Shown piece by piece: positions 561 to 59,399 of a DNA stretch of 64,000 bases. A program made the translations under genes and the position numbers. The notes under the pieces were generated by a model, which saw nothing but the letters and a program-made list of their open reading frames with translations, had not been told where the DNA came from and ran no database searches. How positions within the stretch are numbered: the first letter of the stretch is position 1; each line of letters opens with the position of its first letter. This DNA comes from Macrostomum lignano (lineage: Eukaryota). Where the stretch lies: positions 124,001 to 188,000 of the forward strand of contig NIVC01000936.1 in NCBI GenBank assembly GCA_002269645.1, read 5' to 3'.

Positions 561-581
561 AAACAATACACAGCTGCTTAC

Positions 582-2172: not shown

Positions 2173-2190
2173 GAGGTGAACTGTTCTCAC

Positions 2191-2492: not shown

Positions 2493-2544
2493 CTGCAGCA
2501 TTCAGGTGGCGGGAGGGGGCCGGAGCCGCGTCATCAAAAACCCT

Positions 2545-2876: not shown

Positions 2877-2895
2877 AGCACAATCAAATACTCAC

Positions 2896-3246
2896 CAAAA
2901 AGAACTCGCCCGTGCTCTGAAAAAAATGGGAATTGATTTTGCAGAAATGCCGCACCGCCAACTCCTGGCCAGTGGTGATGTAGGGCCCCAGATTCCTGAT
3001 AAAGGACCACTCGTTCTCCAGCACATTCTTGTACTCTTTGCTGGCGTCCGGTTGCTCCTTGAAGAATCTGAGCACCCACTGGTCGAGGAACTCGAAGTAA
3101 TGAATCAACAGGTTCCTGATATCCAGGTCCAGTGCGCTCAGTGAGTCCTGCATCAGCTTCTCCTTGTCGTTTGGCCTGAACGGCTGAGTTGGCGGCCCGA
3201 CCATCTCTAGGAAAAAGCGCTTCACCAGCACGGAGCCGCGCATCAC
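2896..3246 (-). CDS. MAP3K4: MAP3K4 exon 6
   Basis: CAG|GTG acceptor, TTG|GTGAGT donor, 351 nt. VLENEWSFIRNLGPYITTGQELAVRHFC resembles recalled MEKK4 LLEEEWNFTKEITHYIRGGEAQAGKLFC. Confidence 0.92.
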
Positions 3247-3299
3247 CTGCGCGAATATTAGGAGATGGGAAGAGGGATATTATATTGCCGATAATCCTT

Positions 3300-6747: not shown

Positions 6748-9853
<3,106 letters not shown>

Positions 9854-16005: not shown

Positions 16006-16082
16006 ACCTGAAACACAAAATCTCACCCCCCGGAAAACAAGCTAACAATAGCTGCCACATCACCCAAGCAGCGCAGCCTCAC

Positions 16083-16733
16083 CCCGGAAAAGCCCAGATA
16101 GGAGGAAACGCAGATCGATCCGGCCACATCTGGCGAATAATCTCCCGTGTACATGAGGCTCTCGCCGCCGAACCCGGCTCCGGCCAGGGGGTCCCGGTCG
16201 TGCCGAGTCTGTATCTGGGCGGTAAACCGGCTCCCATCGCCGCTTCCGGTTCCGCTTCCTGTTGCGGTTCTCATTCTCAGCCGGCGCATCGCGTCCGTGA
16301 CCGCCGCCGCGGCCACCAAGTTGCCGGCGCTGCCGCCGCCGCCACCGCTGCCAACGTCGGCATCGTCCGATTCGTCGAAGGCGTCAACAATTTGAGGTGG
16401 CGGCGAAGGCGGAAGCTGCTGCTGCTGATGGTGCTGACGACCTCCGCCATGGCGCCGGCCTCGCCGAGCGACGTGACGGCGCCGACCCTGCGCCAGGTCC
16501 TCGAGCCGGTCCTGCTCCTGGATGGCGAACTCTTCGCTAGTGTTCAGCTCGATTGGCGCGCCGGCGGCAGCTGCGGTGGAGGCCTCGCCGGAGTCGCCCT
16601 GCTCAGACTCTGACTCGGATTCGAACTCTCCCTCCTCAGCCTCTTCTTCATCCGCGTCATCCTCGGTCGCTTCGTCAAATTCGTCGTTTCCACGACGAAT
16701 AATATTATCACTGACGTCTGGCAGTTCGGCCAT
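16083..16733 (-). CDS. MAP3K4: MAP3K4 probable first coding exon (acidic, low complexity)
   Basis: ATG at 16733 with an in-frame stop upstream, GGG|GTGAGG donor at 16083 (alternative at 16027), 651 nt. Its link to MAP3K4 is inferred from strand, phase and position. Confidence 0.62.
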
Positions 16734-16884
16734 GAATAAAAACAGATCAGCATCTGCTTAAATACTAGATATTACTATTCGCGTTTGCCTACTGATAGTA
16801 GCAACCTAAGAATTTGCAGTAGTACTTTAACCCCACAATTCTCTGGCTAGCGGCTATAGACTGGTTACCCTCTGACTTAAACTA

Positions 16885-17547: not shown

Positions 17548-18039
<492 letters not shown>

Positions 18040-39708: not shown

Positions 39709-41116
39709 GACCTGCATGACCGCACTGGACAGTCGCGGCCGCACACCGCTGGACCTCGCCGTCTCTGGCGGACACGCCGAACTTCTGGAGGCGGCATTCA
39801 ACCAAAATGACAACTGGCGCCGATTTTTATCGCGTCAGCGCGACTTCAAAGGCCGAACGGCGTTGCACGCGGCGTGCCGGGCAAAATCGACTTCTAAGGG
39901 CGACGGCGGCGGCGCGCAGGTGCTGGAGCTGTTGCTGCGCCGGCTGGAGGCGCCGGAGAAGCTGGCGCGGTTCCTCGACGAAGCGCGCGGCTGGCCGGCC
40001 GGATTTTACGCCGCCGAACGGGGCGACGTCGCCTGCCTGCGGCTGCTGGCCAGCCGGCCGGACACGCAGCTGGCCGGGCTGATTCAGCGCGCCGAAGACG
40101 GCCGGTCGCTGCTGCACGCGGCGGCTCAGGGCGGCAGCGTCGAAGCCTTCGAATTCGGCGTCAGCCTCGGTCTCGACCCGTCCTCGTTGGTGACCGACGA
40201 AGGCGAGACGCCCGCGCACGACTGCGCCCGCGTCGGTCACGCCGAGCTGCTGCGCCGCCTTCTTGACGGCGACACCGGCGGCGCTTTAATCGGCGCGGCG
40301 GAACGGCGCGGCGGACAGACGCTGCTGCACTGCGCGGCTGAGTCGAACAGCTTGGAGGCGGCGCGAGCCCTCATCGAAGCCGGGCACCCGCTCGATGCGC
40401 TTGACGACTGGGGCCGCACGCCGGCTGAGGCGGCTCGAGTTGTTGGAAGCCACGACGTGGCGGAGGCGATCGAGGCGGAGCTGTCCGCCGCGGCTGCGAC
40501 CCCGGAGCTGCACGCCGCAGTCCTGACCGAGGCGGCGCCTGACGATCAAGACTGCGACCCGGCAGCTGGCGTGGTTGAAGTTCTGCAGTCTCTTGAAGGT
40601 GACGAGCGGCGCCGGCGGCTGTGGCAGCGCGATGAAGCCGGCCTGACGGCAGCTCACGTGGCGGCTGGAGCCGGCAGTGTCGGCGCTCTGGCGCAGCTTC
40701 TGACTGCCGAGCCGCGCCTGCTGCGGGCGCTGACGCCGCGTCGCGAGACGCTGCTCTACTTGGCTTTGAAATGCGACAAAGACGAGGCGCGTGACGCTAC
40801 CATTCAGCGGCTGCTTGACTGGGGCGTTCGGACAGACGTTGCCGACGTGAACGGCATCACGGCGCTGAGACTGGCCGCTCACAAAGGTCTCTCCGGAGCG
40901 TTCGATGCGATTTCAACTGCCTGCGGTGGCCTTCGCGCTGCCTGCAACCGCGAGTGCGTCTTCGACAGCGGCGTCGGCGGCGTCGGGAAGCAGCGAGGCA
41001 GCCTCCTGCATCTGGCCGCTGCAGGTGGCTCGGTGCACATTGTTCAACGCTTGCTCGCTCTGCGCATCCCGGCTTTCGATCCGTTTCTGGCGCGGGATGC
41101 CAAGGGCCGCCTTCCG
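39709..41116 (+). CDS. Ankyrin-repeat protein, exon 2
   Basis: CAG|G acceptor, CCG|GTGCGT donor. Multiple G-x-T-[PA]-LH-x-A motifs. Confidence 0.9.
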
Positions 41117-41561
41117 GTGCGTCCGCGTCTCATGTTTTGCTTTTTTCTGTGCCAAGAAACGTCGGTGTGAGTCAAGACAGAAATTCTAGAATCTCCGGTT
41201 CCTTTATTTGGGATAAAATGAGGAATTCGCGTCAATTTGAGGCTCCAACTGGAATGGCAATTGTCTCCAATGTCGCCTTCTAGTATCGACAGAAAAAGAT
41301 GCCTCCGATTCTAGCGCTAATTAAAATATGAAAGCAAAAAAACCTCCATTCTTCGTAATGTATTTTAAAAACCTGCCTCCCAAATTTTTTTTCCAAGAAA
41401 CGTACTTTCTATTCTTCTACTTGAGTAGTCATTGGTGAGCACTCTGTGCCTTTGGGGGAGGGTTTTTCTCAATCAACTGGTCTGACAAATTGCCAATTGC
41501 AGTCAGCTCAATGTTAGAATACCTTTCTTAAAGCACGATAGCCGTTCCTCCGTTTCTACAG

Positions 41562-42066
41562 GTGCACTGGGCAGCCCGGGCCGGCTCCGCTGATTGCTTG
41601 GCCTGTCTTCTGCGCCTGGAAATTGCGGCGGGTCGCGCGGCACCGCAGCCGCCCAGCCTCCATCATCTGGCGATGCGGAGCGGCTCTGAGCAGGCGGTCG
41701 CCGTGCTTGACCGGCTGCGCGTGCCCGCCCTGCGCTTGGACAGCCGCGGCCGCTCCCTGCTTCACTCGGCAGCGGCCGGTGGCAGCGAGGGCCTCGTCAA
41801 ACGCCTGCTTGACACGCCAGCAGCGGCGTTGAAGCAGTCGCTGACCGCTGTGGACAATCGAGGAGCCACGCCGGCTCACGCTGCTGCGGCGGCCGGTCGT
41901 GCGGACATCCTTCGACTGCTGTTGGACGGAGGCGACTGCAGCACCGCGGCGGAGACGCTGCTTCGCGCAGCAGCTCGCGGCGGCTGCCTTGAATCCGTCC
42001 GGCTGCTGCTTGACAGAGCGGAGGGTCGCTTGAGCTTTGATCGTTCTGTGTCCGAAGATGCTGAAG
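41562..42066 (+). CDS. Ankyrin-repeat protein, exon 3
   Basis: CAG|GTG acceptor. Splicing restores KGRLP|VHWAARAG. Phase-1 donor G|GTGTGT. Confidence 0.88.
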
Positions 42067-42229
42067 GTGTGTGTTTCTGCAACTGCTTTATGAGTCAGCG
42101 TGAGTATGCTAGTCCATTACAAGTACAAGTTCCACTAATACTCGGTGCACATCAAGTGACAGCAGATCCCTATCAGTGCCAGTTCATCTGCCTCAGCTGC
42201 CCGAGCCCACTCAATTTCTTAAGTTCAGT

Positions 42230-42830
42230 GCTCAGTTAGGTTTATTTTATTAGGTTAATTTTATCATTGTTTTAGTTTCTTTTACGAGCTAGTTTAGTTC
42301 ACTTTAGTTTAGTTCACTTTAGTTCAGTTTAGTTCACTTTAGTTCAGTTTTGTTCAGCTTAGTTTATTTTAGATCAGTTTAGTTCAGATATTCGTGTTAA
42401 TTTAGTTTAGTTCAGTTCAGTTCAATTTAGTTCTGAATCTAGTTTAGTTTAGTTTAGTTACTTTACCATTTTTATTTTAGTTTCGTTTCGTTTCGTTTCA
42501 TTCAGTTTAGTTTAGTTAAGTTTAGTTTAGATCAGTTTAGTTCAGATAATCGTGTTTAGTTTAGCTTATTTTTTATTTTCGTTTAGTTTCGTTTAGTTTA
42601 GTTTAGTTAAGTTTAGTTAAGTTTAGTTAAGTTTAGTGTAGTTCAGTTTAGTTTAGCTTAGTTTAGTCTAGTTCAGTTTAGTTCAATTTAGTTCAGAGGA
42701 TCCCGTTTAGTTTAGTTTAGTTTAGCTTATTTTTTAATTTTAGTATAATTCAGTTTAGTTTAGTTCAGTTTTTTACTGGTAGTTTACTTCACTTTAGTTC
42801 AGTTCAGTTTCGTTCAGTTTAGTGCAGTTT
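42230..42830. repeat. Degenerate (TTTAG/TTCAG)n pentamer repeat (intronic)
   Basis: Direct inspection. Confidence 0.92.
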
Positions 42831-42970
42831 ATTTATCTGCGAGATGCATCACCGACCCTAGGTGTGAGTATTCTCCAGCACCCGATGCTCCTGATAGAAA
42901 AACAAACAAACCAAAAACTGGGTCGCCAATAAACTCACTTTAACGAGCTGCTTGCTCATCAAACGCGCAG

Positions 42971-43554
42971 ACGCTCCGCCACTGGAACAGAGCCGATTCC
43001 GCGAAACAGCGGCGCACGCAGCCGCCAGAGCGGGCCAGACGGAGTTGCTGTCCGAGCTGGTGCTCAGTCGAACGGAGCCGCCGCCACCGGGGCTGCTCCA
43101 CGCGGCTGCGGAAGCTGGCCAGGCCGCCACGGTGACTCTGCTGCTGGAGTCCGGCCGCTGCTGCCCGTTCGATAGGGACCCGGCCACTGGTCGGACGGTG
43201 GCCCACTGCGCCGCTGCGTCTGGCGACCCCAGGACACTGAGAGCTGTGCTCGCTTTCGATCAAGACGATGCGATGTCCAAGTCGACTGACTCCGCGGGAC
43301 GGTCGCTGCTGCACTCGGCAGTGGAGACGGAGGCGGCCGCTGTGAGCCCCTCAGCCCAGCGCCATCTCGTTGTCCGTCGCCTACTTCGATTGGACGGCAA
43401 GGCGGGCCAGCCGCTGACGCAGGATGCGGACGGCCGGACGCCGGTGGACCTGGCTGTGCTGTCGGGCGCCGGCCCGGCCTTGGCGGTCCTCCTCGGGGCT
43501 CTGGTGACGGAGGGCAAGTCGTCCGAGGTGCTTTCGGAGGTGCGAGATTTGGAG
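42971..43554 (+). CDS. Ankyrin-repeat protein, exon 4
   Basis: CAG|AC phase-1 acceptor, GAG|GTAATT donor (alternative at 43539). RETAAHAAA, GRTVAHCAA, GRSLLHSA, GRTPVDLA. Confidence 0.82.
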
Positions 43555-43813
43555 GTAATTTGGAAGAAATGGTGTGGATACCGTTTTTATTTGGTAGGTT
43601 GGGGCGAGAAGCTCGGCGATCAACGCATATGACTCTTCCGCAACGATCCCTGATTCGATTCCGTACATCCGGCAACTTACACCTTGCGCCTCTGCGCCTT
43701 GGGGGTTGGCCCTCATCCTTGTGAACCCCTGTCCAATAATCGCGCACAAGCCATAAATAAATGCTCACGGAATTGAACCATGCAGGGGTTTACCGCTCCT
43801 CTGCCACCACCAG

Positions 43814-44251
43814 AACCGCATCATCATCCCAGCCACCCATCGCACACTGAAGGGTCGCGGCCTGTTGCACTCCGCCTGTCTCACTGGCCGCGCAGACACC
43901 GTTCTACAATTGGTTGCTATGGGCTTGAGCCCTTGGCAACCGGACGCGCACGGCCTGCCGGCGGTATGCTACGCCGCAGCCGCCAAGAGTCCGGACGCTC
44001 TGCACGCTCTGCTCAACGCTGGCACGGTCGGCGGGCTCGGCCTCCTGGCAGCTCGCGTGGCCGAAGACGGCGCCACCCTGGCGCACTTGGCCGCTCACGC
44101 CAACCGCCCTGCGGCACTTCGTCTGCTGGCGGCGGCCGGCCTGCCCGTCCTGACTGCGGTCGATTTCGACGGCTGGAGTCCATTGCAACTGGCGATCGCC
44201 GCTGGAGCCTGGGACGCCGCTGAGGCCTTGGTCGATGAGGCCGCTTCGCAG
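43814..44251 (+). CDS. Ankyrin-repeat protein, exon 5
   Basis: CAG|AAC acceptor (phase 0), CAG|GTAAAA donor. GATLAHLAA, GWSPLQLA. Confidence 0.8.
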
Positions 44252-44391
44252 GTAAAACTTTGCATGCCATTCATTCCACAGAATCTACTGAGAACTTTCA
44301 AACTCGAGCACGAGCCTCAAATCACGGAATCGAACCCTGGGTAGCTTACCACTTTACTGAGTTCAGCAGTGCCGTTTCGTCACTTTGACAG

Positions 44392-45516
44392 GTGGAAGCT
44401 GCCATCGCGGCCGAGGCAGACCCGACGGTTGAGTGTCCGGCCGCGGCGCGCCTCCCGGACATGCGGACGCCAGACGGTCGATCGCTGCTTCATCTGGCCG
44501 TGGCAGCTGGAAACTCCGGCCTGGTGATCGGCATTCTCTCCATCGCCCGTCTGTTGAGCCCGCCAGCATCGGGTCAGTCCTCCCCGCCGCTGCATCCGAC
44601 GCACGTCCCCGATCCGCTGGGCTGGACGCCGCTGCATGTGGCCCTCTTTGCTGGTCGGGCGAATCTCGCTCGCCTGCTTCTGGACATCAGCCCGGTGACG
44701 GCTTTGTCAGTCAGCCGTACCGCTGACGGCCTGACCTGCCTGCACCTGGCCGTGTCCGGCTGCTGCCTCGGCCATGGCAGCGTGGATGCCATTCAACTGT
44801 GCCAGGAGTTCTGGCCCTGGCAGGCGGTCACCAGAGACAATGAAGGCGCAATGCCGATTCATTTGGCGTCGGCCTGCGGCTGTGAAGCTGCTGTGAGCGC
44901 TTTGCTGAGCACTGGCGGCGTGTTTCAATCCGTGCATCTGACTGCTCAAGGCGACTCTCCGCTGCACCTAACCGGCTCGGAGTCTGTGGCCCGCCTGCTG
45001 TCCAGCCGGATGCTAATGAAGGACCGAATTCAGCGTAATTTAGCCGGACGCACCCCCAGCGAGGAGGCGCGAGCTCGGGGCCGCTCTGAGGCGCTTGTCG
45101 AACTGCTACGAGAGCTGGAGCTGGAGGCACTGGTGGATGCTGATGGGAAACAACCTGCCAACCAGCCTACCAACCAGCCTGCGAACCAGCCTGCGAACCA
45201 GCCTGCCAACCAGCCTGCCAACCAGCCTACCAACCAGCCTACCAACCAGCCTACCAACCAGCCTGCCAACCAGCCTGCCAACCAGCCTGCCAACCAGCCT
45301 GCCAACCAGCCTGCCAACCAGCCTGCCAACCAGCCTACCAACCAGCCTGCCAACCAGCCTGCCAACCAGCCTGCCAACCAGCCTGCCAAAAAAATACCAA
45401 CCAGCCTGCCAACCAGCCTGCCAACCAGCCTGCCAGCCAGCCTGCCGACCAGGTCTCTCGATCGCGAATCTCTAGTAGTAGGAGATTACGTTAAAAATAG
45501 CTATAACTTATATTGA
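44392..45516 (+). CDS. Ankyrin-repeat protein, exon 6 (3' boundary uncertain; the frame reads through a 12-bp repeat)
   Basis: CAG|GTG acceptor. [31 protein letters not shown]. Confidence 0.78.
45150..45445. repeat. 12-bp minisatellite (AACCAGCCTGCC), in frame as NQPA
   Basis: Direct inspection. Confidence 0.95.
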
Positions 45517-45559
45517 AGTCTCTTTGGGCACTGAAAAACTGAATAAAGGGAGTTGTACG

Positions 45560-45830
45560 AGCTAGCCTTAGTTGTCAGAGCATCGGACTCACTACTTAAT
45601 GGTCGGGGGTTCAATTCCCGACCCTTTCAGAACAATTTGTGTCCTTGAGCAAGACACCTAACTCTGCATTGCTTCAGTTCACTCGGCTGTAAAATGGGTG
45701 CCAGCATTAGTTGGGGTAATTGAGGATGTGTGTGGCGACCCCCCCCCCCAGTCCTTGGACTGAACAGCCGTACGCAGCCTTCAGATGCGCCGCGCAATAG
45801 CTGCGGCTGAGGTGTCGGTTGCACATCTGG
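45560..45830 (+). mobile_element. tRNA-derived SINE with a CORE-like central domain
   Basis: A-box TAGCCTTAGTTG (45563), B-box GGTTCAATTCC (45608-45618), then GTGTCCTTGAGCAAGACACCTAACT...CTGTAAAATGGG, resembling the recalled MIR/CORE segment. The 3' end is approximate. Confidence 0.68.
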
Positions 45831-46544
45831 CCATTAGGGCAGGTGTAATTTCAAGATGGCGCTTCTAGTTTAAAGAAGCCTCTTTATTGATTTTAGATAT
45901 GTCCATGTTGCTGCAACCACATTCATTACTTGGAAAATAATGATTCTTGTTTCGAATTGTAATTTCATACGTATTTGACTTTTATATAGTTCTGCCGTTA
46001 TTGCCCTCCATTGCTACTTGAAGTAGTGCAAATCTTCTACTATTTAATTTACTAGGTACTGCCGTTAGAAGTTTATAAACCAATAAAAATGCTTATCCTG
46101 AATAAAAATAGTCTGTTCATTGCTGCCGACATTCTTTTGTCAGTCTGTCTCGGGCTGGGGTTCAAGGCTTTGGATTAAATGGAAGCTGAGATTGTTCGCC
46201 TCATCAAAGTATCTCCAAAGTTCTTCGTAAATAGACTGCCAAGTGAAGTTTGACTGCCAAGCAGAAGAAGAGCAGTGCAATTTAAGCAGTAAATTGTAAA
46301 AGATGCTTCAATTTAACAGTGTTGTAAACCTGAAAATATGGAACTTCTCGAATTGGGGTAATAAAATATTTGCTAAGAGAACCGGACGTAGATGTGACAG
46401 CTGTGGCCCGTGAGGAGATCAGAGTTCAGGAAATAAAGAGGATAGAGAAACTGGGGGTAGATGAGAACTGGAGAAGGGCAGATATGATAGAAGTGAAATA
46501 ATAAAAATGAGGGTGAGGGAAATTTGAAATGAGAGCTAAAAAGG

Positions 46545-47290
46545 GTAGAGATGAGAGCAGGGGAAGTGTAGAGATGAGAGCAGGAGAAGTGTAGAGATGA
46601 GAGCAGGAGAAGTGTAGAGATGAGAGCAGGGGAAGGGTAGAGATGAGAGCAGGGGAAGGGTAGAGATGAGAGCAGGGGAAGGGTAGAGATGAGAGTCGGG
46701 GAAGGGTAGAGATGAGAGTCGGGGAAGGGTAGAGATGAAAGCCGGGGAAGGGTAGAGATGAGAGTCGGGGAAGGGTAGAGATAGGAGTTGGAAAGGGTAG
46801 AGATGAGAGCAGGGAAATGTAAAGATGAGAGCAGGAAAAGGGTAGGGATGAGAGTCGGGGAAGGGTAGAGATGAGAGTCGGGGAAGGGTAGAGATGAGAG
46901 TCGGGGAAGGGTAGAGATGAGAGCAGGGAAATGTAAAGATGAGAGCAGGGAAATGTAAAGATGAGAGCAGGAAAAGGGTAGGGATGAGAGTCGGGGAAGG
47001 GTAGAGATGAGAGTCGGGGAAGGGTAGAGATGAGAGTCGGGGAAGGGTAGAGATGAGAGTCGGGGAAGGGTATAGATGAGAGTCGGGGAAGGGTAGGGAT
47101 GAGAGTTGGGGAAGGGTAGAGATGAGAGTCAGGGAAGGGTATAGATGAGAGTCGGGGAAGGGTAGAGATGAGAGTCGGGGAAGGGTATAGATGAGAGTCG
47201 GGGAAGGGTAGAGATGAGAGTCGGGGAAGGGTAGAGATGAGAGTCAGGGAAGGGTAGGGATGAAAGCTGGGAAAGGGTAGAGATGAGAGC
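46545..47290. repeat. 23-bp G-rich minisatellite
   Basis: Unit GAGATGAGAGTCGGGGAAGGGTA. Confidence 0.96.
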
Positions 47291-47529
47291 TGAGTACCTT
47301 TAGGCCAATATTCACAATCTTTTCAAAAGAATCGTAAAATGCAAGACGAAAATGAACTTTAAAATCTGCAGCTTCCGGTACGGAAGCGGCGCGTATTTTT
47401 AGATTTTTATTACCTGAGTAGCATGCACGGATATAGTAAGAGTTGTAATTCAAGTCCCATTTAGGTGGTTTATTTACTGATACAATCAACATCGAATACG
47501 GACTCGACAGGAATTAAGGGGGTTGAGCA

Positions 47530-47656
47530 TTAGTCGGAGTAGCAGTGCGGGAACTGCTGTCGGAACTCGTTCATGGCCACGTCACCGAATTTGTACAGCT
47601 TCTTGCAGGGCGTGCCCACGCTCTCAAAGATGCCGTTGTACTTCTGGCGGCTGCTC
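47530..47656 (-). CDS. Divergent ETS-domain protein, exon 3 (last coding exon)
   Basis: CAG|G phase-2 acceptor. SSRQKYNGIFESVGTPCKKLYKFGD...TAA. Confidence 0.78.
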
Positions 47657-47694
47657 CTGCGGCGGGTTTGAGAGAGGAGTGTGACTAGAGAGTT

Positions 47695-48650
47695 TCATTA
47701 GAGAGGTTATGATTAGACAGGGTGATTTAACAGGGTGATTAGAGAGGTCTGATTAGACAGGGTGATTAGAGGGGCCTGATTAGACAGGGTAATTGTAGAG
47801 GCCTGATTAGACAGGGTGATTAGACAGGGTGATTAGAGAGGCCTGATTAGACAGGGTGATTAGAGAGGCCTGATTTGACAGGGTGATTAGAGAGATCTGA
47901 TTAGACAGGGTGATTAAAGAGGTCTGATTAGACAGGGTGATTAGACAGGTCTGATTAGACAGGGTGATTAGAGAGGCCTGATTAGACAGGGTGATTAGAG
48001 AGGCCTGATTAGACAGGGTGATTGTAGAGGCCTGATTAGACAGGGTGATTAGAGAGGTCTGATTAGACAGGGTGATTAGAGAGGCCTGATTAGACAGGGT
48101 GATTAGACAGGGTGATTAGAGAGGCCTGATTAGACAGGGTGATTAGAGAGGCCTGATTAGACAGGGTGATTAGAGAGGCCTGATTAGACAGGGTGATTAG
48201 AAAGGCCTGATTAGACAGGGTGATTGTAGAGGCCTGATTAGACAGGGTGATTAGACAGGGTGATTGTAGAGGCCTGATTAGACAGGGTGATTAGACAGGG
48301 TGATTAGACAGGGTGATTAGACAGGGTGATTAGACAGGGTGATTAGACAGGGTGATTAGACAGGGTGATTAGACAGGGTGATTAGACAGGGTGATTAGAC
48401 AGGGTGATTAGACAGGGTGATTAGACAGGGTGATTAGACAGGGTGATTAGACAGGGTGATTAGACAGGGTGATTAGACAGGGTGATTAGACAGGGTGATT
48501 AGACAGGGTGATTAGACAGGGTGATTAGACAGGGTGATTAGACAGGGTGATTAGACAGGGTGATTAGACAGGGTGATTAGACAGGGTGATTAGACAGGGT
48601 GATTAGACAGGGTGATTAGACAGGGTCATTAGACAGGGTGATTAGACAGG
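47695..48650. repeat. 13/14-bp minisatellite (intronic)
   Basis: ATTAGACAGGGTG mixed with ATTAGAGAGGCCTG. Confidence 0.97.
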
Positions 48651-48740
48651 ACTGCTACCAGAAGAATTGCTATAAATAGCAATACATTTTTAAGCTACTA
48701 TTTATAGATCCAAGGGTTTAAAAGTGCAAGCCAGGCTGAC

Positions 48741-48999
48741 CTGATGGCTCGGGTCAGCGTACTGAACTCCGCGCTGGTGTTGCTCTTGAACTTGCACCAG
48801 ATCAGAGCCAGCATCTGGGTATTCAGCACCAGGAAATAGTTCGATGGCCGATCTGTCGGCTTCCTGCGCTGGTCGCAAAACACGGCCACCTGGCCAAGGG
48901 CCGACTGCTCATCAGGAGATTCAAAAGTTGGCGCCGAGGAGTTGAGAACGCTGTGCAGAATGACGCCCAGGAATGTGTGAATTCGGCGACCGTGACCTT
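48741..48999 (-). CDS. Divergent ETS-domain protein, exon 2
   Basis: CAG|AA phase-1 acceptor, AG|GTCAGC phase-2 donor. IHTFL...FLVLNTQMLALIWCKFKSNTSAEFSTLTRAIR. Confidence 0.78.
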
Positions 49000-49034
49000 C
49001 TGTTGAATGAGTGAACGGTTGTTGCGAAATCTAT

Positions 49035-49918
49035 GGAATTCTATCAAACTAATCTAGAGACCTTTTTGGAACTGATCTAGAGATAATCTAGAAACTAATC
49101 TAGATACAATCTAGAAACTGATCTAGAGACAATGTAGAAACTAATCTAGAGACAATCTAGAAACTAATCTAGAGACAATCTAGAAACTAATCTAGAGACA
49201 ATCTAGAAACTAATCTAGAGACAATCTAGAAACTGATCTAGAGGCAATCTAGAAACTGATCTAGAGACAATCTAGAAACTAATCTAGAGACAATCTAGAA
49301 ACTAATCTAGGGACAATCTAGAATCTGATCTAGAGACAATCTAGAAACTAATCTAGAGACAATCTAGAAACTGATCTAGAGACAATCTAGAAACTGATCT
49401 AGAGACAATCTAGAAACTGATCTAGAGACAATCTAGAAACTAATCTAGAGACAATCTAGAAACTAATCTAGAGACAATCTAGAAACTGATCTAGAGATAA
49501 TCTAGAAACTAATCTAGATACAATCTAGAAACTAATCTAGAGACAATCTAGAAACTAATCTAGAGACAATCTAGAAACTAATCTAGAGACAATCTAGAAA
49601 CTAATCTAGAGACAATCTAGAAACTGATCTAGAGATAATCTAGAAACTAATCTAGATACAATCCTTAAACTAATCTAGAGACAATCTAGAAACTAATCTA
49701 GAGACAATCTAGAAACTGATCTAGAGGCAATCTAGAAACTAATCTAGAGACAATCTAGAAACTATTCTAGAGACAATCTAGAAACTAATCTAGAGACAAT
49801 CTAGAAACTATTCTAGAGACAATCTAGAAACTAATCTAGAGACAATCTAGAAACTATTCTAGAGACAATCTAGAAACTAATCTAGAGACAATCTAGAAAC
49901 TAATCTAGAGACAATCTA
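49035..49918. repeat. 23-bp minisatellite (11+12 dimer, each half containing TCTAGA; intronic)
   Basis: Unit TCTAGAAACTAATCTAGAGACAA. Confidence 0.97.
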
Positions 49919-50012
49919 AAGATCAGAGTGTAAACATCAGCTAGACCTTTACGGTCATTAGAAGAATGTCTAGAGCAGATCTAAAGAGCCCGTAGCATCC
50001 AAACTCGCTCAC

Positions 50013-50493
50013 CCATTCTCCGTCGAATGATGTCTGCAGCCTTGGCGGCCTTCTCGTGCATCAGCGGGTCCAGTCCTGAGCCGCCGAAGCCGCCGCCGCC
50101 GCCCTGCACACTTGAAGAAGCAGCCGTGGCTGAAACACAGCTTACCGCCTGCGGCGGCACGTAGGGTGGCAACAGTCGCAGCGTTAAAATCTGCGGCGGA
50201 GAACGGCTGCGGCTGCGGCTGCGGCTGCGACTTCGGCTATGACTTCTGCTGCGGCTTCTGCTGCGGCTTGTCCGCTTCATCGAATAGTCAATCGGCTTCT
50301 CATCTGAGTCAGTCGGCGGGGACAGCTGATGAAGGCTGCTGGGCGGCTTTGACAGGGCGGGACAGGGCTGCAGCGGCGGAGGCGGCAGCGGCTGCTGCTG
50401 TTTGATGCCATCAAGATTTCGCCGGTGCGTCAGCTGCAGCGACACCTCCTGCGGTCCGCGGTGATCGGTAAACAACGCGGGCAGCTCTTGCAT
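50013..50493 (-). CDS. Divergent ETS-domain protein, exon 1 (Pro-rich, RS-rich, PIDYS motif; the true start may be upstream)
   Basis: ATG G|GTGAGC phase-1 donor matches exon 2. The spliced CDS is 867 nt (288 aa). Confidence 0.7.
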
Positions 50494-51090: not shown

Positions 51091-51530
<440 letters not shown>

Positions 51531-53366
51531 GAGGGCCATGCTAACTGCTCTGAGGTCTCTGCGGTTGAGCCTGAGGAGGGCTCTACGCAGGAGAGGAGAG
51601 GGGCAGAGGACGGCAGCACGGGATTGCCTACAATTCCGGGTGTCGTGCCACCTGCAGAGATGCTCGGAGTCAGTCCAGCGGTTAACGCGGGAGTTGATCA
51701 CCGAGGCGGGATGGGGGCTCCCGGCCCCAGCAGCACGCCGGCGGAGCCAGCCTTGGCCAGCAGGTCAGCGTGCTCGTTGCCGAGGAAACCAGCGTGGCCC
51801 GGGATCCATCTGAGCTCCACCTGGTTGCCTAGCGCAAGCCCGTCGAGCTGGGTATTGCAGTCCAGGACGGACCTGGGGCTGGCGGTGCTGCGGCAGAGGG
51901 CCCGAAGGGCTGCTTGGCTGTCAGAGGGAAAAATAAATTTCCGACCGCCAAGCTGCCTTCGGCGCAGCTCTGCCGCGCAGGAGCTGATGGCAAGCACCTC
52001 GCTCTGAAAAACACTGGAGTTGAGCCCAGTGTGCTGGGAGTAGCTTCACACCACTTCTCCCTTGAAGAAGACGCAAGCTCTGAAGCCTGAAAGACCATGC
52101 CTCATAGAGCCGTCAGTGCAACAGTGGACTTCAGAATCGCTCCAGCTGTCACTCGCCTCGTGTCGAGGCTGAATAGTGACCTTATACCTTTGGCTCAGGA
52201 GAAGGGTGGCTGGGATCGAGTCCGTGAGGATGTTGAGCCCGCCACACTCCTCGAGAGCCTTGAGGCAGAGGTCAGAGTGCGGGATAAGCGACCGCTTCTT
52301 AAAGGCCCGCACTTTTTTGAAGGCCACCCCAGCATCCAGAAGACGCCGGGTGCTCTTCGCCGCCTCTCCTTTAATATAAATATCCAGAGGAGGGGCACAG
52401 AGGAAGGCATTCATGCCTTCAAAAGGAGTAGGGGGTGGAGCGCCCATAGTCATGCGGCAGGCTCTGCCCTGGATTTTGTAGAGGGCGTCGAGGTTGCTCT
52501 TGGCGCTCAGGCCGCTGGCCCACTCGAGGATGGCGTAACTGATCGAGGGGCGGATGATGGCAGTGTAAATCCACCACAGCTTCCTGGGGGTGAGCCCCCA
52601 GGTGGTGCCCACGGCGCGCCTGATCTGGGCCAGGACAACCAGGGCTTTTTTGGCTTTAGTTTGAATGTGCGGAGTCCAGTTAAGCCTGTGGTCCAGAGTG
52701 AGGCCCAGGCAGCGGACCTGCTTCTCCATGGAAATATTCTTTCCATAGAGGGTGAGTGGCTTAATGGTCCAGAGCAGTTTGTTGGTAAACATGACTGCTG
52801 TGGTTTTCGACTCTGAGAGTCTAATGCCACATTGGTTTGCCCAACGCTCCGCTCGTCCCAGAAAGCCCTGCAGAAGGTCTCTGATGGTATCAACCGAGGG
52901 GCCCGCGAATATCGCGGTCACATCATCGGCATAGCCCACCTTGAGAATGGGGTCGTGGAGATCACTGCAAAGCAACTCATCCATGACCATGTTCCAGAGA
53001 ATGGGGGTGAGAACTCCGCCCTGGGGGCCCCCTTTCAGGACAGGCACCGAAAGAGAGCTGCCGTTCAGGTGGGCCACAACAGTGCGGTTCCGGATCATGA
53101 ACATGATCCACCGGACAAGGTGAGGGTGCGTGGCCCTGGATTCCAGGGCTCTGCAAAAGGCCTCGAAGATGAAGTTGTCGAAGGCCCCCTCAATGTCCAG
53201 GAAAAGCGAGAGGGCAAAGCCGATGCCAAGAACGGCCCTCTCCAGGAAGTCAACAATGACATGGAGGGCACTCTCGGTAGACCTGCCTGCGCGGAAGGCG
53301 TGCTGGTTCTGCGAGAGTGGGAAGCGCTTCAGCTCGACTGAAAGCAGGCGCCAAAGCACCAGTCTC
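51531..53366 (-). pseudogene. LINE ORF2 3' part: RT core, thumb, RNase H
   Basis: QHAFRAGRST, FLDIEGAFD, GGPQGGVLTPILWN, YADD, then TDGS...SEV...DSQAAL...WIPGH...GNEHADLLAK. One stop at 52046-52048 and a frameshift near 51710. Confidence 0.93.
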
Positions 53367-53988
53367 ATGCTCTGCAACCGCGGCAGCACTCCTACCTTTA
53401 ATAATGGCGGATGGACCGAGGTCCTCGACGCCACACTCGTTACCCCAAGACTCTTTGACAGAGTTGAGGAGTGGAGAGTCTGGTCTGAGGAGCCCTCCCT
53501 GTCTGACCACTGCTTTATCGCCTTTAACATCGCGGACACTAAAACCCAGTCTCCGATCACTTGGAGGCGCAATATCCGCAACACTGATTGGGCGGCCTAC
53601 AAGGCTGCCCTTGATCTGCACCTGCAGGAACTCACGGACTTACGTCCGATTGAGACCTGCGAGGATGTGGATCATATGGCTGAGACGCTGACAGGTTGCA
53701 TTATTGCAGCCTACGTAGCGGCTTGTCCTGCTCGCGCCTACAAAGGCAAGACCTCGGCGCCGTGGTGGAACCCGGAGCTGGGGAAACTCAGGCGGAAGGC
53801 CAAAAGCCTTTATCGCCGTGCCATGAAGACTGGAAACCCGGAGGACATGGAGCTTTTCCGGCAAGCCTCCCGCAATTTCAAATCTGAAGTGCGCAAGGCC
53901 AAGGAATGTAAGTGGCGCCAATTCTGCAATGAATTGGATCAAGACAGACCTACTTCCAGGCTTTTCAAGGCCTTCAGCTTCAGCTTCA
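53367..53988 (+). mobile_element. Inverted ORF2 fragment (APE C-terminus plus linker) from a different LINE family
   Basis: TPTFNNGGWTEVLDATL...SDHCFIAF...NTDWAAY...APWWNPEL is homologous to, but clearly diverged from, the host TFNNGRWAEVIDTTI...SDHRFIRF...NTDWAAF...APWWNPEL. Confidence 0.9.
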
Positions 53989-55616
53989 GAGAGTGGGAAG
54001 CGCTTCAGCTCGACTGAAAGTAGGCGCCAGAGCACCAGTCTCTCGAGGAGCTTGAGGCAGAAAGAAGTGAGGCTGATAGGCCTGAAGGCCTTCACCGATT
54101 GGTAGTCGCTCTTTCCAGGCTTGGGGATAAAGACCACCCGGGCCTCTCTCCATGCAACTGGTACATAGCCCAGCTCCATACAAGCTCGAAGGAGACGACA
54201 GAGCAGGTCCAGGAAGCGGTGGTTTTTCACCGCCTCGTGCAAGAACGCTGGGTAGATGCCGTCGGGCCCAGGCGCCTTGAACGGGTTAAAGGACCTTGCC
54301 GCTCTAATAATGCGGTCTTTGGTGATCATAGACTTTGCTAGGCCTTGCCCTCCCACTGTGTGGTCTGGCGGGCCCTGCTGAGTCGGAGATTTAGGGAAAA
54401 AACTGTTGAGCATGAGCTCTAGAGTCTCTTCCGAACTCTCTGTGACCGAGCCGTCAGGTCTCTTCACAACAGAGAGTTTAGAAAAACGGTCATTAGTGAG
54501 TGCCTTAACCACGCGGGCTACGGGGCGAGAGCCCTCAAGCCCTTCGCAATATTGGCGCCACTTGGCCGTCTTGGCCCTTCTGACTTGGCCCTTAAGCTCG
54601 TGGATTGCACGGGTATAGGCCTCTCTATCAGATGGGTCTTTGGTTTTGAGCGCTCGCCTTTGGAGGGTCCTGGCTCGGCGCCGAAGGGCCCCGAGCTCTG
54701 GGTTCCACCAGGGAGCAGATTTCTTGCCTTTGTAGGCCTTTAGGGGGCAGGCTGCTTCAAAGGCAGTGGTGATCGCCCCGCCCAGGGAGGAGGCGAGATA
54801 ATCCACCACCTGGCAGTCAGAGAGGTCACTGGGGGGGGTCAAGATCCCGAAGGCCGCGGCTCAGCTTCGAGCCAAAGGCGGCCCAATCGGTGTTCCTGAC
54901 GTTCCGACTCCAAGTGACCTTAGGCTTTTGCTTGGTCGGCCCAATGCAAAAGCGGATAAAGCGGTGGTCCGAGAGCGAGTCCTCGTCCCACACTCGCCAG
55001 CCCGTAACTGCGGAAAGCAGTCCGGGTGAGGCGATGGTGGTGTCGATGACTTCGGCCCACCGCCCATTATTGAACGTTGGTGCATTGCCCACGTTACAGA
55101 AATTGAGGTTTGTGCTGCTGACGTAGGCCAGCAGCTCCTCGCCTCTGTTGTGTTATTGGTGTTCTTGCTGCCCCAATGCAGGTGGTGTGCGTTCACATCC
55201 CCTGCGATGAGCAGCTCGAACCGACGGGACGCGGCGTAGTCAATGAGGTTGACTAGTGCCTCGCAGACTACTGGGGCATCGCCTGGGAAATAGGCAGATG
55301 CTACCAGCACAGGTTTATTTGGAATGAGGTTATTGATTTGAACAACACAGATGTCCCCAGTCGAGAGATCAGGTCTCATCCATGCCTCAAAAGCTTTTGC
55401 AGCAAAGACCAGAGATCTTGGGCGAGGCTGAGAGTCCGCCATGCAAAAACAGTGGTAGCCAGATGGCACATTATTTGGCTTACCTTTAGTCATCCAGGGC
55501 TCCTGCACGAAGACCAGGCCCGGAAGCTGTTGCTCTGTCGTGCGCATCAGATTGACTGACGCCGCCACGCAGTGCTGGGTGTTGATCTGCAGATACCAGG
55601 TAGCCGCTGGCATCAT
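53989..55616 (-). pseudogene. LINE ORF2 5' part: APE endonuclease, linker, RT N-terminus
   Basis: QINTQH, VQEPW, GDVNAHH, SDH, KAPGPDG, FRPISLTS. Frameshifts near 55145 and 54835. Confidence 0.93.
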
Positions 55617-57126
55617 TGCAGATCGCGTGTTGCAGTCGCCAGGAGTTCCTCCTCCTCCTCGGCGCTCACCAGCTTCGGGTCGGGGTCGCCGGTGTCCATG
55701 GGCTCCTCTTCAGCAAAAGGCCCCCGATTGGCTGGAAGGCAGTAGGCAGCGTTCGCCGCCCTTCGCCCACCGGCCACGGGGTCCTCCGCTTCAGACTGGC
55801 CCAATGCCCTGGAGCAGCCAGCCGCCTGGGCAGGCGGGTCCGTCTCCAGTCGGCCCTGCCCCGAGGGGTTGGGCCCAGCTGGGACATCCCCACCCTCCCT
55901 GGACGAACTGGTGCGCATAGGCGTCCCGGCGACCTCTCTCCTCAGCTGGGTGATTTTAGCGGTGCGGACCGCCTCAGCTGCGCGCTGGTACAGGCCGCGC
56001 CGCTTGGTGCTGCGCGCCGGGCGTCGGTCGCCTCCGCCCTCAGCAGCGCGTTCGGCTTTACCCGCGCGGCCGTGCTGCCGGGCGGGGCGGTTTGCTTTGG
56101 CAGCCTGAGCAGAAGCTCGCGCCTCGGCCCCGGCTGCCTCGGCATTCCGCCCGCCCTGCTCACTGCCACGGGGAGGGTCGGCCTCGTAGGAGCGGATGCG
56201 CAGCTTCCAAAGGCCGACGTTGATGAAGCTGCCGTGTGGATAGCGCCTCATCCAGGCGTCCGATAGCCCCAGGATGGCTGTGAAGCCAGTACCGTCGGTG
56301 CGCTTAAGGGTGTCATGCACCACTAGGCCCGCGGCGGGAAGCTCTCGGTTGACTGCAAGCAGTCCTCTCCGGAGCTCGTCAGCAGAGGTAACGACGCTCC
56401 TGGCCGGAACCCAGATTCGATGCCTCGTGGTCCGGGGGCGCTCGTCCTCTCTGCAGAAGGCTAGATTGAGGTCCCAGCTCTGCTCGGGCAGCAGCTCAAG
56501 GAGCCGCCGACCCGAGTCAGCATCACTGGGCCAAATGAGAAGGCACGAGTCCCTCGTCGCATTCGAATGAATGTTCAGAGGCGTGCCCTTCAGTTTGCTT
56601 CCACAGGAGGCCATCAACGGCACCTCTCACCTGCTTCAGCTGGTCGGGAGACAGGCGCGCGTCCTTCCCCAGAATGACAACCACCGGTTGCCTCTTTGCC
56701 GCATCAGCGTAGGAGGCCCAGGGGTCGGTGGAGCCTTCTTCAGGTGGGCTGTCCACCGGCTGCATCGGCCTCCCTATCCTGGGCAGGGGCTTCAGTGGGC
56801 TCGAGGCCCTCTTCCGCCACCGCCCCAGATTGGGAAGCTTCCGCTGCCGCGGGCCGTTGGCCCCTGGCACCGGTTTGGCTTCCGCCCTCCCTGGCCCGCC
56901 TCGCCTTGTTAAGTCGACGGCGGGCAGCTCCAGAGGTGGTGCTCAGCTGCTTGGCAGCTGGAGTAGCAGGTGTCTTCTCGGAGGCACCGCTCAGAGTTTG
57001 CTCCACGGGTCTCGCTGAGGCGTCCCCGATGGTAGCAAGTGGTATGGCCGCGGAGTCCACGGCCCCAGCCGAGGCCGGAGGCACTGTGTCATCCACAGCC
57101 GGTTGGTTACTTCGGTTAGAAGCCAT
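55613..57126 (-). pseudogene. LINE ORF1 (gag-like, SYADAAKR motif, no CCHC knuckle seen), two frameshifts
   Basis: Three overlapping ORFs (56740-57126, 56523-56870, 55613-56623) join into one product. The stop overlaps the ORF2 ATG (ATGA). Confidence 0.75.
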
Positions 57127-57601: not shown

Positions 57602-58845
<1,244 letters not shown>

Positions 58846-59399
58846 ATCTCTAGTATCTATCAGTTCGATTCCTATCATATTACTTTTAGTAAAGGGCTTG
58901 GAAAATTTAACTGCCTTTATTTGTTAGTGAAGTATTGCAAAATTGCAGTGTTGTTCAGCTCAATGAAATATCGGAAGTCGAAGAAGAAACACAATTTCTG
59001 CTTCTAGAAGAAGCACAGCAAGTAAGAGAGACTCGAGCTTTCTATTTCTCACTGTTTTCCACTTTCCTCACTCGCTGTCTCCGTCTCTCTGTGCCGGTGA
59101 TTTATGACCCCGGCTGGGCCGTCCCTGATTTATCTCCTCCGAGTGCTACAGGGCAGCTGTTTCGAACATGTGTTTCAACCCCCCCCCCCCTGCTGTAAGA
59201 AGTGAGTCAGGCCCTGAGCAGATAACGCGCTTTCATGATGGGATTTGCCAGCCAGCCAGCCAGACCAGCCTCCCTTGGGAGTTTGACTCCCCCTTCACTG
59301 CTACAAGACGATAGAGTTTCTGACTGTCTTGGCGACTTGGAGATTACATTATCAGTTTTTTTAATTCGACTTTTACTTTGTAGGTGAATGATTCGTTTT

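What the first reader, a model, noticed from the sequence alone, without database searches (positions are those of the whole stretch)
47530..50493. Hidden, highly divergent ETS-family transcription factor
Seen: three exons with matching phases (1, 2) give 288 aa, and the domain is split so that no single ORF shows it. Hand alignment to the ETS fold: IHTFL~LWQFL, FLVLNTQMLALIWCKFKSN~FKLxDPxxVAxxWGxRKN, FSTLTRAIRSS~YEKLSRALRYY, GIFESV~GIIxKV, KKLYKFG~RLVYKF. The two GGA-contacting Arg residues (RxxR) are kept. The following Tyr-Tyr is Ser-Ser, two core Trp residues are replaced, and there is an insertion. The N-terminus has PIDYS (close to the CtBP-binding PxDLS) and an RS tract. Inference: a lineage-specific ETS repressor, possibly with altered DNA specificity.
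Basis: partly seen in the sequence, partly recalled or inferred. Interest (0 to 1): 0.7.

Follow-up and report, generated by a model that had tools for sequence, protein, structure and literature searches.

The report
Divergent ETS-like gene in a flatworm
A three-exon gene, almost certainly from the flatworm Macrostomum lignano, encodes a 288-residue protein whose C-terminal half is a strongly diverged ETS-type DNA-binding domain; it belongs to a small gene family seen only in Macrostomum, and the only public gene model found for this locus is wrong, so the domain is not annotated here.

Summary
On the minus strand, exons 50493-50013, 48999-48741 and 47656-47530 join through GT..AG introns in phases 1 and 2 to give 288 aa.

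The ETS reading is supported.
- Pfam Ets is the only notable hit, but it is below threshold (21-23 bits against a cut-off of 26.9).
- A 13-sequence family profile finds solved ETS domains almost exclusively (Elf-3 at E = 8.6e-9).
- An AlphaFold model (pLDDT 89) matches only ETS structures in its top 50 Foldseek hits.

The family is restricted. A search of 1.84 billion representative proteins returned only Macrostomum relatives, in about six paralogue groups. UniProt already labels several of them "ETS domain-containing". The closest paralogue, Mlig004122 (about 50% identical), has introns at the same two positions and phases. Relatives' transcripts read straight across both junctions.

The only public model found for this locus (A0A1I8FHQ2) is a chimera that lacks helix 1 and exon 3.

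The RxxR pair, the Lys and one Trp are kept. The two other Trp and the Tyr-Tyr are replaced, and there is an extra helix.

The repressor/CtBP idea is not supported. PIDYSMK is conserved but has Tyr where the motif requires Leu. The RS tract is a local hexanucleotide-repeat expansion.

Verdict: a real, divergent, lineage-restricted ETS variant. DNA binding is inferred, not shown.

The parts
50013..50493 (-). Exon 1 (481 nt; codons 1-160 plus 1 nt). It encodes the disordered N-terminal half and the first flanking helix (H0, about residues 143-159).
   Evidence: ORF from the ATG at 50493; donor G|GTGAGC at 50013/50012. Homologues align across the junction.
50275..50295 (-). PIDYSMK motif (residues 67-73). 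It is conserved as P[IL]DYSMK in all 5 members of the subgroup.
   Evidence: checked by hand against the sequence.
50200..50274 (-). RS tract (residues 74-98), encoded by a degenerate (CGGCTG)n / 12-mer repeat. It is absent from the homologues.
   Evidence: TRF array at 50204-50269.
49000..50012 (-). Intron 1 (1013 bp, phase 1). A 23-bp tandem array at 49046-49918 fills most of it.
   Evidence: The intron at the same position in the M. lignano paralogue is 598 bp.
48741..48999 (-). Exon 2 (259 nt). It encodes H1 (IHTFLGVIL), the inserted helix, S1, S2, H2 and recognition helix H3 up to RAI-R. The codon of the second Arg (R247) is split AG|G by intron 2.
   Evidence: (101.8 bits against the family HMM).
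47657..48740 (-). Intron 2 (1084 bp, phase 2). A 13/27-bp tandem array at 47710-48650 fills most of it.
   Evidence: The intron at the same position in the paralogue is 99 bp.
47530..47656 (-). Exon 3 (127 nt including TAA at 47532-47530). It encodes the end of H3 (SSRQKY), S3, the wing, S4 (KKLYKFG) and the C-terminal helix.
   Evidence: 45.9 bits against the family HMM.
47584..48999 (-). Genomic span of the ETS-like core (about residues 162-271), interrupted by intron 2.
   Evidence: Pfam Ets match at residues 209-261. AlphaFold secondary structure. Foldseek matches.
47469..47474 (-). AATAAA, a likely polyadenylation signal about 56 nt downstream of the stop codon.
   Evidence: Read directly. 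Consensus match only.

Best explanation
This is an intact protein-coding gene of Macrostomum lignano, or a near-identical genome. It belongs to a Macrostomum-restricted, multi-paralogue family whose conserved C-terminal module descends from the ETS DNA-binding domain and is closest to the ELF/ESE branch. The predicted module has the ETS topology H1-S1-S2-H2-H3-S3-S4. It also has an extra short helix and a longer hairpin between H1 and S2, and one flanking helix on each side. Shown here: the gene model, the homology, the predicted fold, the restricted distribution and purifying selection on the domain. Inferred: the protein is a nuclear, sequence-specific DNA-binding factor that inserts helix 3 (TLTRAIRSSRQK) into the major groove. 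The two Arg that read the GG of GGA in ETS factors are kept, as are the Lys of the H2-H3 turn, the H2 Trp and the basic wing. The Tyr-Tyr-Tyr that follows RxxR in canonical ETS domains is replaced by Ser-Ser-Arg. The preferred site is therefore likely to differ from the canonical GGA(A/T) core or its flanks. The N-terminal half is fast-evolving and disordered. It carries two conserved short motifs (LPPPPLxPxP and P[IL]DYSMK) that probably recruit partners of unknown identity.
For: Gene model. It aligns colinearly with homologues across both junctions. The paralogue Mlig004122 has the same intron positions and phases. Relatives' intronless transcript contigs encode the uninterrupted protein. 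Homology: Pfam Ets is the only notable hit (E = 3.5e-4 for the full protein and 1e-4 for the domain). All 13 family domains hit Ets at E <= 1. The 13-sequence profile against PDB gives Elf-3 at 8.6e-9, EHF at 9e-9, Elf5 at 2.6e-7, Elf-1 at 6e-7 and Elf-2 at 2.2e-6, and 44 of 46 hits are ETS. Fold: the AlphaFold2 model has pLDDT 89.1 and pTM 0.85 with ETS-order secondary structure. The Foldseek top 50 are all ETS domains, with target-normalised TM 0.46-0.84 and probability 0.94-1.00. Restriction: 13 hits among 1.84e9 representatives; the 12 real ones are M. lignano or transcript contigs from four sequencing runs of unnamed source. Selection: domain dN is 0.13-0.47 against N-terminal dN of 0.66-1.5, and domain omega is about 0.04-0.24. 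Residues corresponding to ETS DNA contacts are among the most conserved: W88, K92 and N94 are invariant, and the two Arg are kept in 11 of 13 members. Arg394 of Ets-1 and Arg235 of PU.1 are the essential recognition-helix arginines (PMC5062964).
Against: No family member reaches Pfam's curated Ets score (best 26.6 against 26.9). Foldseek E-values are modest (best 1.8e-3; none at or below 1e-3). The model rests on only 13 sequences; with 4 sequences it failed (pLDDT 49.7). There is no transcript evidence for this particular gene. DNA binding has not been tested. The Tyr that contacts bases in canonical ETS domains is lost, and two of the three core Trp are replaced. The candidate evolves about three times faster than its nearest relatives, which could mean relaxed constraint. 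dS is saturated, so the omega values are rough. HMMER's local alignment places Elf-3 H1 against the inserted helix rather than against IHTFL, so the H1 correspondence rests on the structure model.
Confidence: 0.8

Rival explanations
1. The domain is ETS-derived but no longer binds DNA. It would be a protein-interaction module, or a duplicate drifting under relaxed constraint.
For: The Tyr-Tyr after RxxR and two of the three Trp are lost. The candidate's domain dN is about three times that of its closest relatives, with omega about 0.22-0.24. One paralogue group (P0009/P0021) has replaced the first Arg with Asp, so DNA-contact loss does occur in the family.
Against: In the candidate, both Arg, the H2-H3 Lys, the H2 Trp and a basic wing (KK..K) are retained, and these positions are among the best conserved in the family. 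The ORF and splice sites are intact. Omega is well below 1.
Confidence: 0.15
2. It is a CtBP-recruiting ETS repressor. PIDYS would act as a PxDLS-type CtBP docking site.
For: P[IL]DYSMK is invariant in all five members of the subgroup, within an otherwise fast-evolving region. It resembles Pro-x-Asp-Leu-Ser followed two residues later by a Lys.
Against: The consensus is Pro-x-Asp-Leu-Ser (PMC5536941), and here the Leu position is Tyr in every member. The motif fails the ELM-style CtBP pattern as I recalled it from memory. The other paralogue groups lack the motif. No binding data exist.
Confidence: 0.12
3. It is a generic winged-helix protein unrelated to ETS (convergent similarity), or a spurious gene model.
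For: All Pfam scores are below the curated cut-off. Single-sequence PDB E-values are weak, 0.06 and above.
Against: Significance rises as family depth increases, from 5.6e-4 to 8.6e-9. Non-ETS hits appear only at E >= 0.11. The Foldseek top 50 are exclusively ETS. Conserved intron positions and cDNA-type contigs from relatives validate the model.
Confidence: 0.03
4. It is an SR-type splicing regulator, on account of the RS tract.
For: There are weak hits of the RS tract to PRP38_assoc (E = 0.03) and to SRSF1 chains (E = 3-5).
Against: Pfam finds no RRM or other RNA-binding domain. The RS tract is missing from all homologues. It is encoded by a degenerate hexanucleotide repeat, which points to a recent repeat expansion in a disordered linker.
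Confidence: 0.03

Closest known systems
ELF/ESE branch of the ETS family (ELF3, EHF, ELF5, ELF1, ELF2; E74-like factors)
   Same: These are the best sequence and structure matches. The spacing from W to RxxR is the same, 16 residues. The H2-H3 turn has a K-x-N pattern like ELF3/EHF (KKNSNMTY against KSNTSAEF). The ending is YKFG, as in ELF3, EHF and ELF5.
   Different: H1 Trp is replaced by His and S1 Trp by Phe. YYY after RxxR becomes SSR. There is an extra helix and a longer S1-S2 hairpin. No PNT/SAM domain is present. Scores are 4-8 bits below the Pfam Ets cut-off. No relatives were found outside Macrostomum.
Macrostomum lignano Mlig004122 (PAA..., P0002; UniProt relative A0A1I8IHP0, 'ETS domain-containing protein')
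   Same: It is the nearest paralogue, at 52% identity in the domain and about 39% overall. It has the same three-exon structure with introns at the same positions and phases, and the same LPPPPPL and P[IL]DYSMK motifs.
   Different: The candidate has a 6-residue insertion after H1 and an RS tract. Its domain dN is about three times higher. Its introns are expanded by tandem repeats, to 1013 and 1084 bp against 598 and 99 bp.
SPI/PU.1 subfamily of ETS factors
   Same: My own knowledge, not tested here: PU.1 is a bona fide ETS factor that also lacks the Tyr directly after RxxR (it has Asn there) and has a distinct site preference. That makes it a precedent for re-tuned specificity with the Arg pair retained. 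PU.1 chains are weak hits of the family profile (E about 0.015).
   Different: It is much more distant in sequence than ELF/ESE. PU.1 keeps the core Trp residues.
Ets-1 / ETV6 domains with flanking regulatory helices
   Same: The model has one helix before H1 and one after S4. Foldseek aligns 137-144 columns to autoinhibited Ets-1 fragments (3mfk, 1md0, 3wu0).
   Different: There is no sequence similarity in the flanking helices. An autoinhibitory role is pure speculation.

Membership tests
ETS domain family (Pfam PF00178) | Score at or above Pfam's curated gathering threshold (26.9 bits) | tested here: not met
   The candidate scores 21.3 bits as the full protein and 23.0 bits as the domain only. 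The best family members score 26.6 and 26.4 bits. Ets is nevertheless the only notable family hit.
ETS domain family (Pfam PF00178) | Significant profile-level sequence similarity to experimentally solved ETS domains | tested here: met
   The 13-sequence profile gives Elf-3 at E = 8.6e-9, EHF at 9e-9, Elf5 at 2.6e-7, Elf-1 at 6e-7 and Elf-2 at 2.2e-6. 44 of 46 hits at E <= 1 are ETS.
ETS domain family (Pfam PF00178) | Winged helix-turn-helix fold with the order H1-S1-S2-H2-H3-S3-S4 | tested here: met
   This rests on a prediction only. AlphaFold2 gives pLDDT 89.1 and pTM 0.85 with elements in that order, plus an inserted helix and flanking helices. The Foldseek top 50 in PDB are all ETS, with TM up to 0.84.
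ETS domain family (Pfam PF00178) | Two invariant Arg in recognition helix H3 (RxxR; Ets-1 R391 and R394) | tested here: met
   R244 and R247 align to the Arg pair of Elf5, EHF and Elf-1. They are kept in 11 of 13 family members. The role of Arg394 is described in PMC5062964.
ETS domain family (Pfam PF00178) | Three conserved core Trp (H1, S1, H2) | tested here: not met
   Only the H2 Trp (W228) is kept, and it is invariant in the family. The H1 position is His and the S1 position is Phe, in the candidate and in nearly all relatives. Which ETS positions are the conserved ones is my own knowledge.
ETS domain family (Pfam PF00178) | Tyr-Tyr(-Tyr) immediately after RxxR | tested here: not met
   The candidate has SSR. 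Paralogues have STR, VRR, VGR, MST or SVK.
ETS domain family (Pfam PF00178) | Binding to a GGA(A/T) core | not testable with these tools
   This needs PBM, HT-SELEX or EMSA with the recombinant domain.
CtBP-binding repressors (PxDLS motif class) | Pro-x-Asp-Leu-Ser motif | tested here: not met
   PIDYS/PLDYS has Tyr at the Leu position in all five subgroup members and fails the pattern scan. The consensus is taken from PMC5536941. The ELM pattern itself was recalled from memory.
SR splicing factors | RRM domain(s) together with an RS domain | tested here: not met
   Pfam finds no RRM. The RS tract is absent from homologues and is repeat-encoded.

The most novel reading that the evidence does not exclude
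The Macrostomum-only clade (at least six paralogue groups) would be an ETS-derived transcription-factor radiation in which the recognition helix has been re-tooled: RxxR is kept, and YYY is replaced by S[ST]R or V[RG]R, with a new conserved Arg. An extra helix has also been added. On this reading the members would recognise a core different from GGA(A/T), which would amount to a new ETS specificity class that arose and diversified within one flatworm lineage.
Probability: 0.25. Interest if true: 0.6.

Novelty: new variant of a known kind. Interest (0 to 1): 0.42.

Why it matters
ETS domains are among the most conservative DNA-binding domains in animals. The Trp triad and the RxxRYY helix are almost invariant, and nearly all members read GGA(A/T). 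A lineage-restricted family that keeps the fold and the Arg pair but rewrites the rest would be a natural experiment in how a constrained domain acquires new specificity. M. lignano is a transgenic-capable regeneration and stem-cell model, so these factors could be tested functionally. On the practical side, the finding flags a wrong public gene model and a family that sits just below Pfam's cut-off, so transcription-factor catalogues of flatworms probably undercount it. It is not a new kind of system, though. Several paralogues are already machine-labelled as ETS-domain proteins.

Tried and rejected
(1) AlphaFold with only the four closest sequences gave an unusable model (pLDDT 49.7). It was replaced by the 13-sequence run.

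(2) The word-index homologue search is not exhaustive. The domain-only query found nothing, and the 14-sequence alignment returned only 4 proteins. I therefore relied on the exhaustive representative search.

(4) P0011, a 1213-aa repeat protein, matches only the N-terminal flanking-helix columns (profile positions about 3-36). I discarded it as unrelated.

(5) The UniRef names 'Transposase', 'DDE_Tnp_1_7', 'CKK' and 'RING-type' attached to some relatives are not borne out by Pfam scans of the sequences held here. I therefore dropped a link to transposons.

(6) I looked for a second family member in the window by six-frame HMM search. There is none.

(7) Literature searches found no description of this family. 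I searched for the Mlig gene ids, for Macrostomum with ETS, and for 'divergent', 'atypical' or 'ETS-like domain'.

(8) I considered and rejected the SR-protein, generic winged-helix and pseudogene readings (see rival explanations).
Full report
**What is in the sequence.**
The region lies in a eukaryotic window that is very rich in tandem repeats. On the minus strand an ORF opens at the ATG at 50493 and runs to a G|GTGAGC donor at 50013. A second coding block runs from an AACAG| acceptor at 48999 to an AG|GTCAGC donor at 48741. A third runs from CCGCAG| at 47656 to a TAA ending at 47530.

- The exons are 481, 259 and 127 nt. The phases are 1 and 2, and the product is 288 aa.
- Tandem arrays fill both introns almost completely: a 23-mer repeated 38 times at 49046-49918, and a 13/27-mer at 47710-48650.
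- An AATAAA lies about 56 nt past the stop.

**Is the gene model real?**
The word-index search with the full protein found four relatives, 48-51% identical over about half the query. Two are Macrostomum lignano proteins: Mlig004122 (P0002) and a UniProt entry named 'ETS domain-containing protein' (P0003). The other two (P0001, P0004) come from short Logan contigs in which the ORF is uninterrupted, as expected of transcripts.

- The alignment is gapless across both predicted junctions: RRRM-EGHGRRIH against KSRL-EGCGKRVH, and TRAIR-SSRQKY against TRAIR-STRQKY.
- In the M. lignano genome the paralogue has exactly three exons. Its introns are at the same two positions and in the same phases, 1 and 2, but are only 598 and 99 bp long.

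This is strong indirect support for the junctions.

**Which organism, and is the gene 'hidden'?**
An exhaustive HMM search of 1.84 billion representative proteins returned only 13 hits. One of them, P0005, is UniProt A0A1I8FHQ2 from M. lignano, a 1216-aa model named 'RING-type domain-containing protein'. It maps colinearly onto the window's minus strand from 50451 down to about 39949. Its ungapped blocks are 98-100% identical, separated by frame changes.

- That model contains part of exon 1 and the middle of exon 2.
- It omits helix 1 and the whole of exon 3.
- It then continues as an antisense reading through the neighbouring ankyrin-repeat gene.

The window is therefore M. lignano or a near-identical genome, and the only public model found for this locus is a chimera that destroys the domain. 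No correct model appeared as a representative. In that sense the gene is unannotated, although its paralogues are annotated.

**Is the domain ETS?**
- *Single sequence.* Pfam Ets is the only notable hit, but it is below threshold: 21.3 bits and E = 3.5e-4 for the full protein, 23.0 bits for the domain alone, against a gathering score of 26.9. The top phmmer hits in PDB are all ETS (Elf5, EHF, Elf-1, Elf-2, Elf-3), but at E = 0.06-1.
- *Family profiles.* A 4-sequence profile improves this to 5.6e-4. A 13-sequence profile covering all paralogue groups gives Elf-3 at 8.6e-9, EHF at 9e-9, Elf5 at 2.6e-7, Elf-1 at 6e-7 and Elf-2 at 2.2e-6. It then hits ETV6, ELK1, SPDEF, ELK4, Spi-B, ERF, PU.1, FLI1/ERG and GABPA. 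44 of the 46 hits at E <= 1 are ETS, and the first non-ETS hit is at E = 0.11.
- *Pfam across the family.* All 13 family domains hit Pfam Ets at E <= 1, with a best E-value of 9.9e-7. None reaches the curated cut-off; the best scores are 26.6 and 26.4 bits.
- *Structure.* AlphaFold2 failed with four sequences (pLDDT 49.7). With 13 it gave a confident model with pLDDT 89.1 and pTM 0.85. Its elements, in domain numbering, are H0 (3-19), H1 (27-39), a short extra helix (49-56), S1 (59-62), S2 (75-78), H2 (81-91), H3 (99-112), S3, S4 (127-130) and a C-terminal helix (132-141).
- *Fold search.* Foldseek against PDB returns only ETS domains in the top 50. The best is Elf3-DNA (3jtg_A) at E = 1.8e-3 with rmsd 2.8 Å over 111 columns. 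Target-normalised TM reaches 0.84, and probability is 1.00 for nearly all of the top 50.

Sequence and predicted structure therefore agree. This is an ETS-derived domain, closest to the ELF/ESE branch, sitting just under Pfam's threshold.

**Residue-level comparison.**
In the HMMER alignments to Elf5, EHF and Elf-1, the candidate's TLTRAIRSS pairs with KLSRALRYY or KLSRAMRYY.

- *Kept:* both recognition Arg (R244, R247); the spacing from the H2 Trp to the first Arg (16 residues); the Lys of the H2-H3 turn (K232); an ELF3/EHF-like K-x-N; and the C-terminal YKFG.
- *Replaced:* the H1 Trp becomes His and the S1 Trp becomes Phe. These changes are shared by nearly the whole family, where 'RVHxFL' and 'FCD' are conserved. 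The Tyr-Tyr-Tyr after RxxR becomes Ser-Ser-Arg in the candidate, and STR, VRR or VGR in most paralogues.
- *Family-wide invariants:* F201, F216, W228, K232, N234, A245 and G271. The two Arg are kept in 11 of 13 sequences. One paralogue group (P0009/P0021) has Asp at the first Arg position.

The importance of the second Arg (Ets-1 Arg394, PU.1 Arg235) is documented in PMC5062964. My mapping of the other contact residues rests on my own knowledge of Ets-1-DNA structures.

One ambiguity remains. HMMER's local alignment puts Elf-3 H1 opposite the inserted helix.

**Family and evolution.**
Apart from one spurious repeat protein (P0011), every hit is M. lignano or comes from the Logan runs SRR28338163-165 and SRR30276804. 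The species behind those runs is unknown to me.

- There are about six paralogue groups: the candidate with Mlig004122; Mlig011372; Mlig004384; Mlig010447; P0009/P0021; and P0012 and P0015. They are 18-30% identical between distant groups.
- Each of four M. lignano groups has a 61-82% identical counterpart in the other datasets. The radiation therefore probably predates those lineage splits, if the Logan runs come from other species.
- The candidate is the most divergent member of its subgroup. It is 47-54% identical to the others, against 76-82% among them.
- Nei-Gojobori estimates give domain dN of 0.13-0.17 among the three relatives and 0.36-0.47 for the candidate. N-terminal dN is 0.66-1.5. 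Domain omega is about 0.04-0.06 for the relatives and 0.22-0.24 for the candidate. dS is saturated, so these values are only indicative.
- No other Pfam domain (no PNT/SAM, no transposase) occurs in any member.
- Several paralogues already carry the automatic UniProt name 'ETS domain-containing protein'.
- I found no paper describing the family.

**The N-terminal half.**
Two short motifs are invariant within the candidate's subgroup, LPPPP(P)LxPxP and P[IL]DYSMK.

- The second motif resembles the CtBP-docking PxDLS but has Tyr at the Leu position in every member. It does not satisfy the consensus Pro-x-Asp-Leu-Ser (PMC5536941; pattern scan).
- The RS tract (residues 74-98) exists only in the candidate. 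It is encoded by a degenerate (CGGCTG)n array at 50204-50269.
- There is no RRM.

The repressor/CtBP and SR-protein readings therefore lack support.

**Most likely mechanism.**
Shown here: an intact, selectively constrained gene for an ETS-fold protein from a Macrostomum-restricted family.

Inferred: it is a sequence-specific transcription factor that binds DNA through H3 and the wing. The GG-reading Arg pair is retained and the neighbouring positions are altered, so the site preference probably differs from canonical GGA(A/T). The N-terminal motifs would then recruit unknown partners. I put the ETS-derived-gene statement at about 0.9 and the DNA-binding transcription-factor inference at about 0.65. 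The main rival, at about 0.15, is an ETS-derived module that has lost DNA binding.

**Verdict.**
This is a new variant of a known kind, not a new system. Interest is moderate.

Noticed in passing
window 1-64000 (for example 37031-39600, 7572-9853, 12006-13915, 57602-58861): Tandem repeats are extraordinarily dense. TRF reports 53 rows at score >= 200. These include a 20-mer repeated 129 times, a 22-mer repeated 104 times, a 31-mer repeated 61 times and (CTAT) repeated 315 times. Both introns of the ETS-like gene are almost entirely tandem arrays, whereas the paralogue's introns are 598 and 99 bp. This suggests intron growth by satellite expansion.
   Followed up: partly
window 51701-56626, minus strand: There is a non-LTR retrotransposon about 1.2 kb upstream of the gene's ATG. 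Separate ORFs hit Exo_endo_phos (E = 1.9e-5), RVT_1 (E = 1.4e-20) and RNase_H (E = 4.6e-7). The coding region is split over several ORFs, so the element may be degenerate. It is bracketed by (TCTA)n at 51091-51530 and (CTAT)n at 57602-58861.
   Followed up: partly
window about 41500-45513, plus strand: A multi-exon ankyrin-repeat gene lies here (Ank_2 E-values from 2e-18 to 1e-11 in three ORFs). It is convergent with the ETS-like gene. Its last coding block runs into a (CCTGCCAACCAG)n array at 45154-45452, which reads as a PT-type repeat.
   Followed up: partly
window 39949-50451, minus strand (public model A0A1I8FHQ2 = P0005): The 1216-aa UniProt/WormBase-type model for this locus is a chimera. 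It joins part of exon 1, part of exon 2 and an antisense reading through the ankyrin gene, with frame changes. Its first residues (PWELQKQKELQR) match an ORF at about 61.3 kb, which suggests either a mis-joined upstream exon or a real 5' exon about 11 kb away.
   Followed up: partly
window 16026-16757 and 17713-18039, minus strand: Two similar acidic ORFs (…[18 protein letters not shown]… and …[18 protein letters not shown]…) lie 1-2 kb apart. They look like a local duplication of an exon or a small gene. Their identity was not examined.
   Followed up: no
window 522-986 (and possibly 2190-3279 and 6962-7579), minus strand: An ORF gives a weak hit to MEKK4_N (E = 8e-4, below the cut-off). Neighbouring non-repeat ORFs on the same strand may be exons of one large gene at the left end of the window.
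   Followed up: no
P0012, P0015, P0013/P0021 (M. lignano relatives; not in the window): The UniRef names of these family members ('Transposase', 'DDE_Tnp_1_7 domain-containing', 'CKK domain-containing') are not supported by Pfam scans of the sequences held here, which show only the sub-threshold Ets match. These names probably reflect mis-joined or fragmentary gene models in the older M. lignano annotation.
   Followed up: partly
L001 (M. lignano NIVC01000416.1, 276623-298339): The paralogue Mlig004122 lies between a glutaredoxin gene and a Meis/PKNOX homeobox gene. None of these neighbours is in the window, so the two paralogues are not in conserved synteny, at least locally.
   Followed up: no
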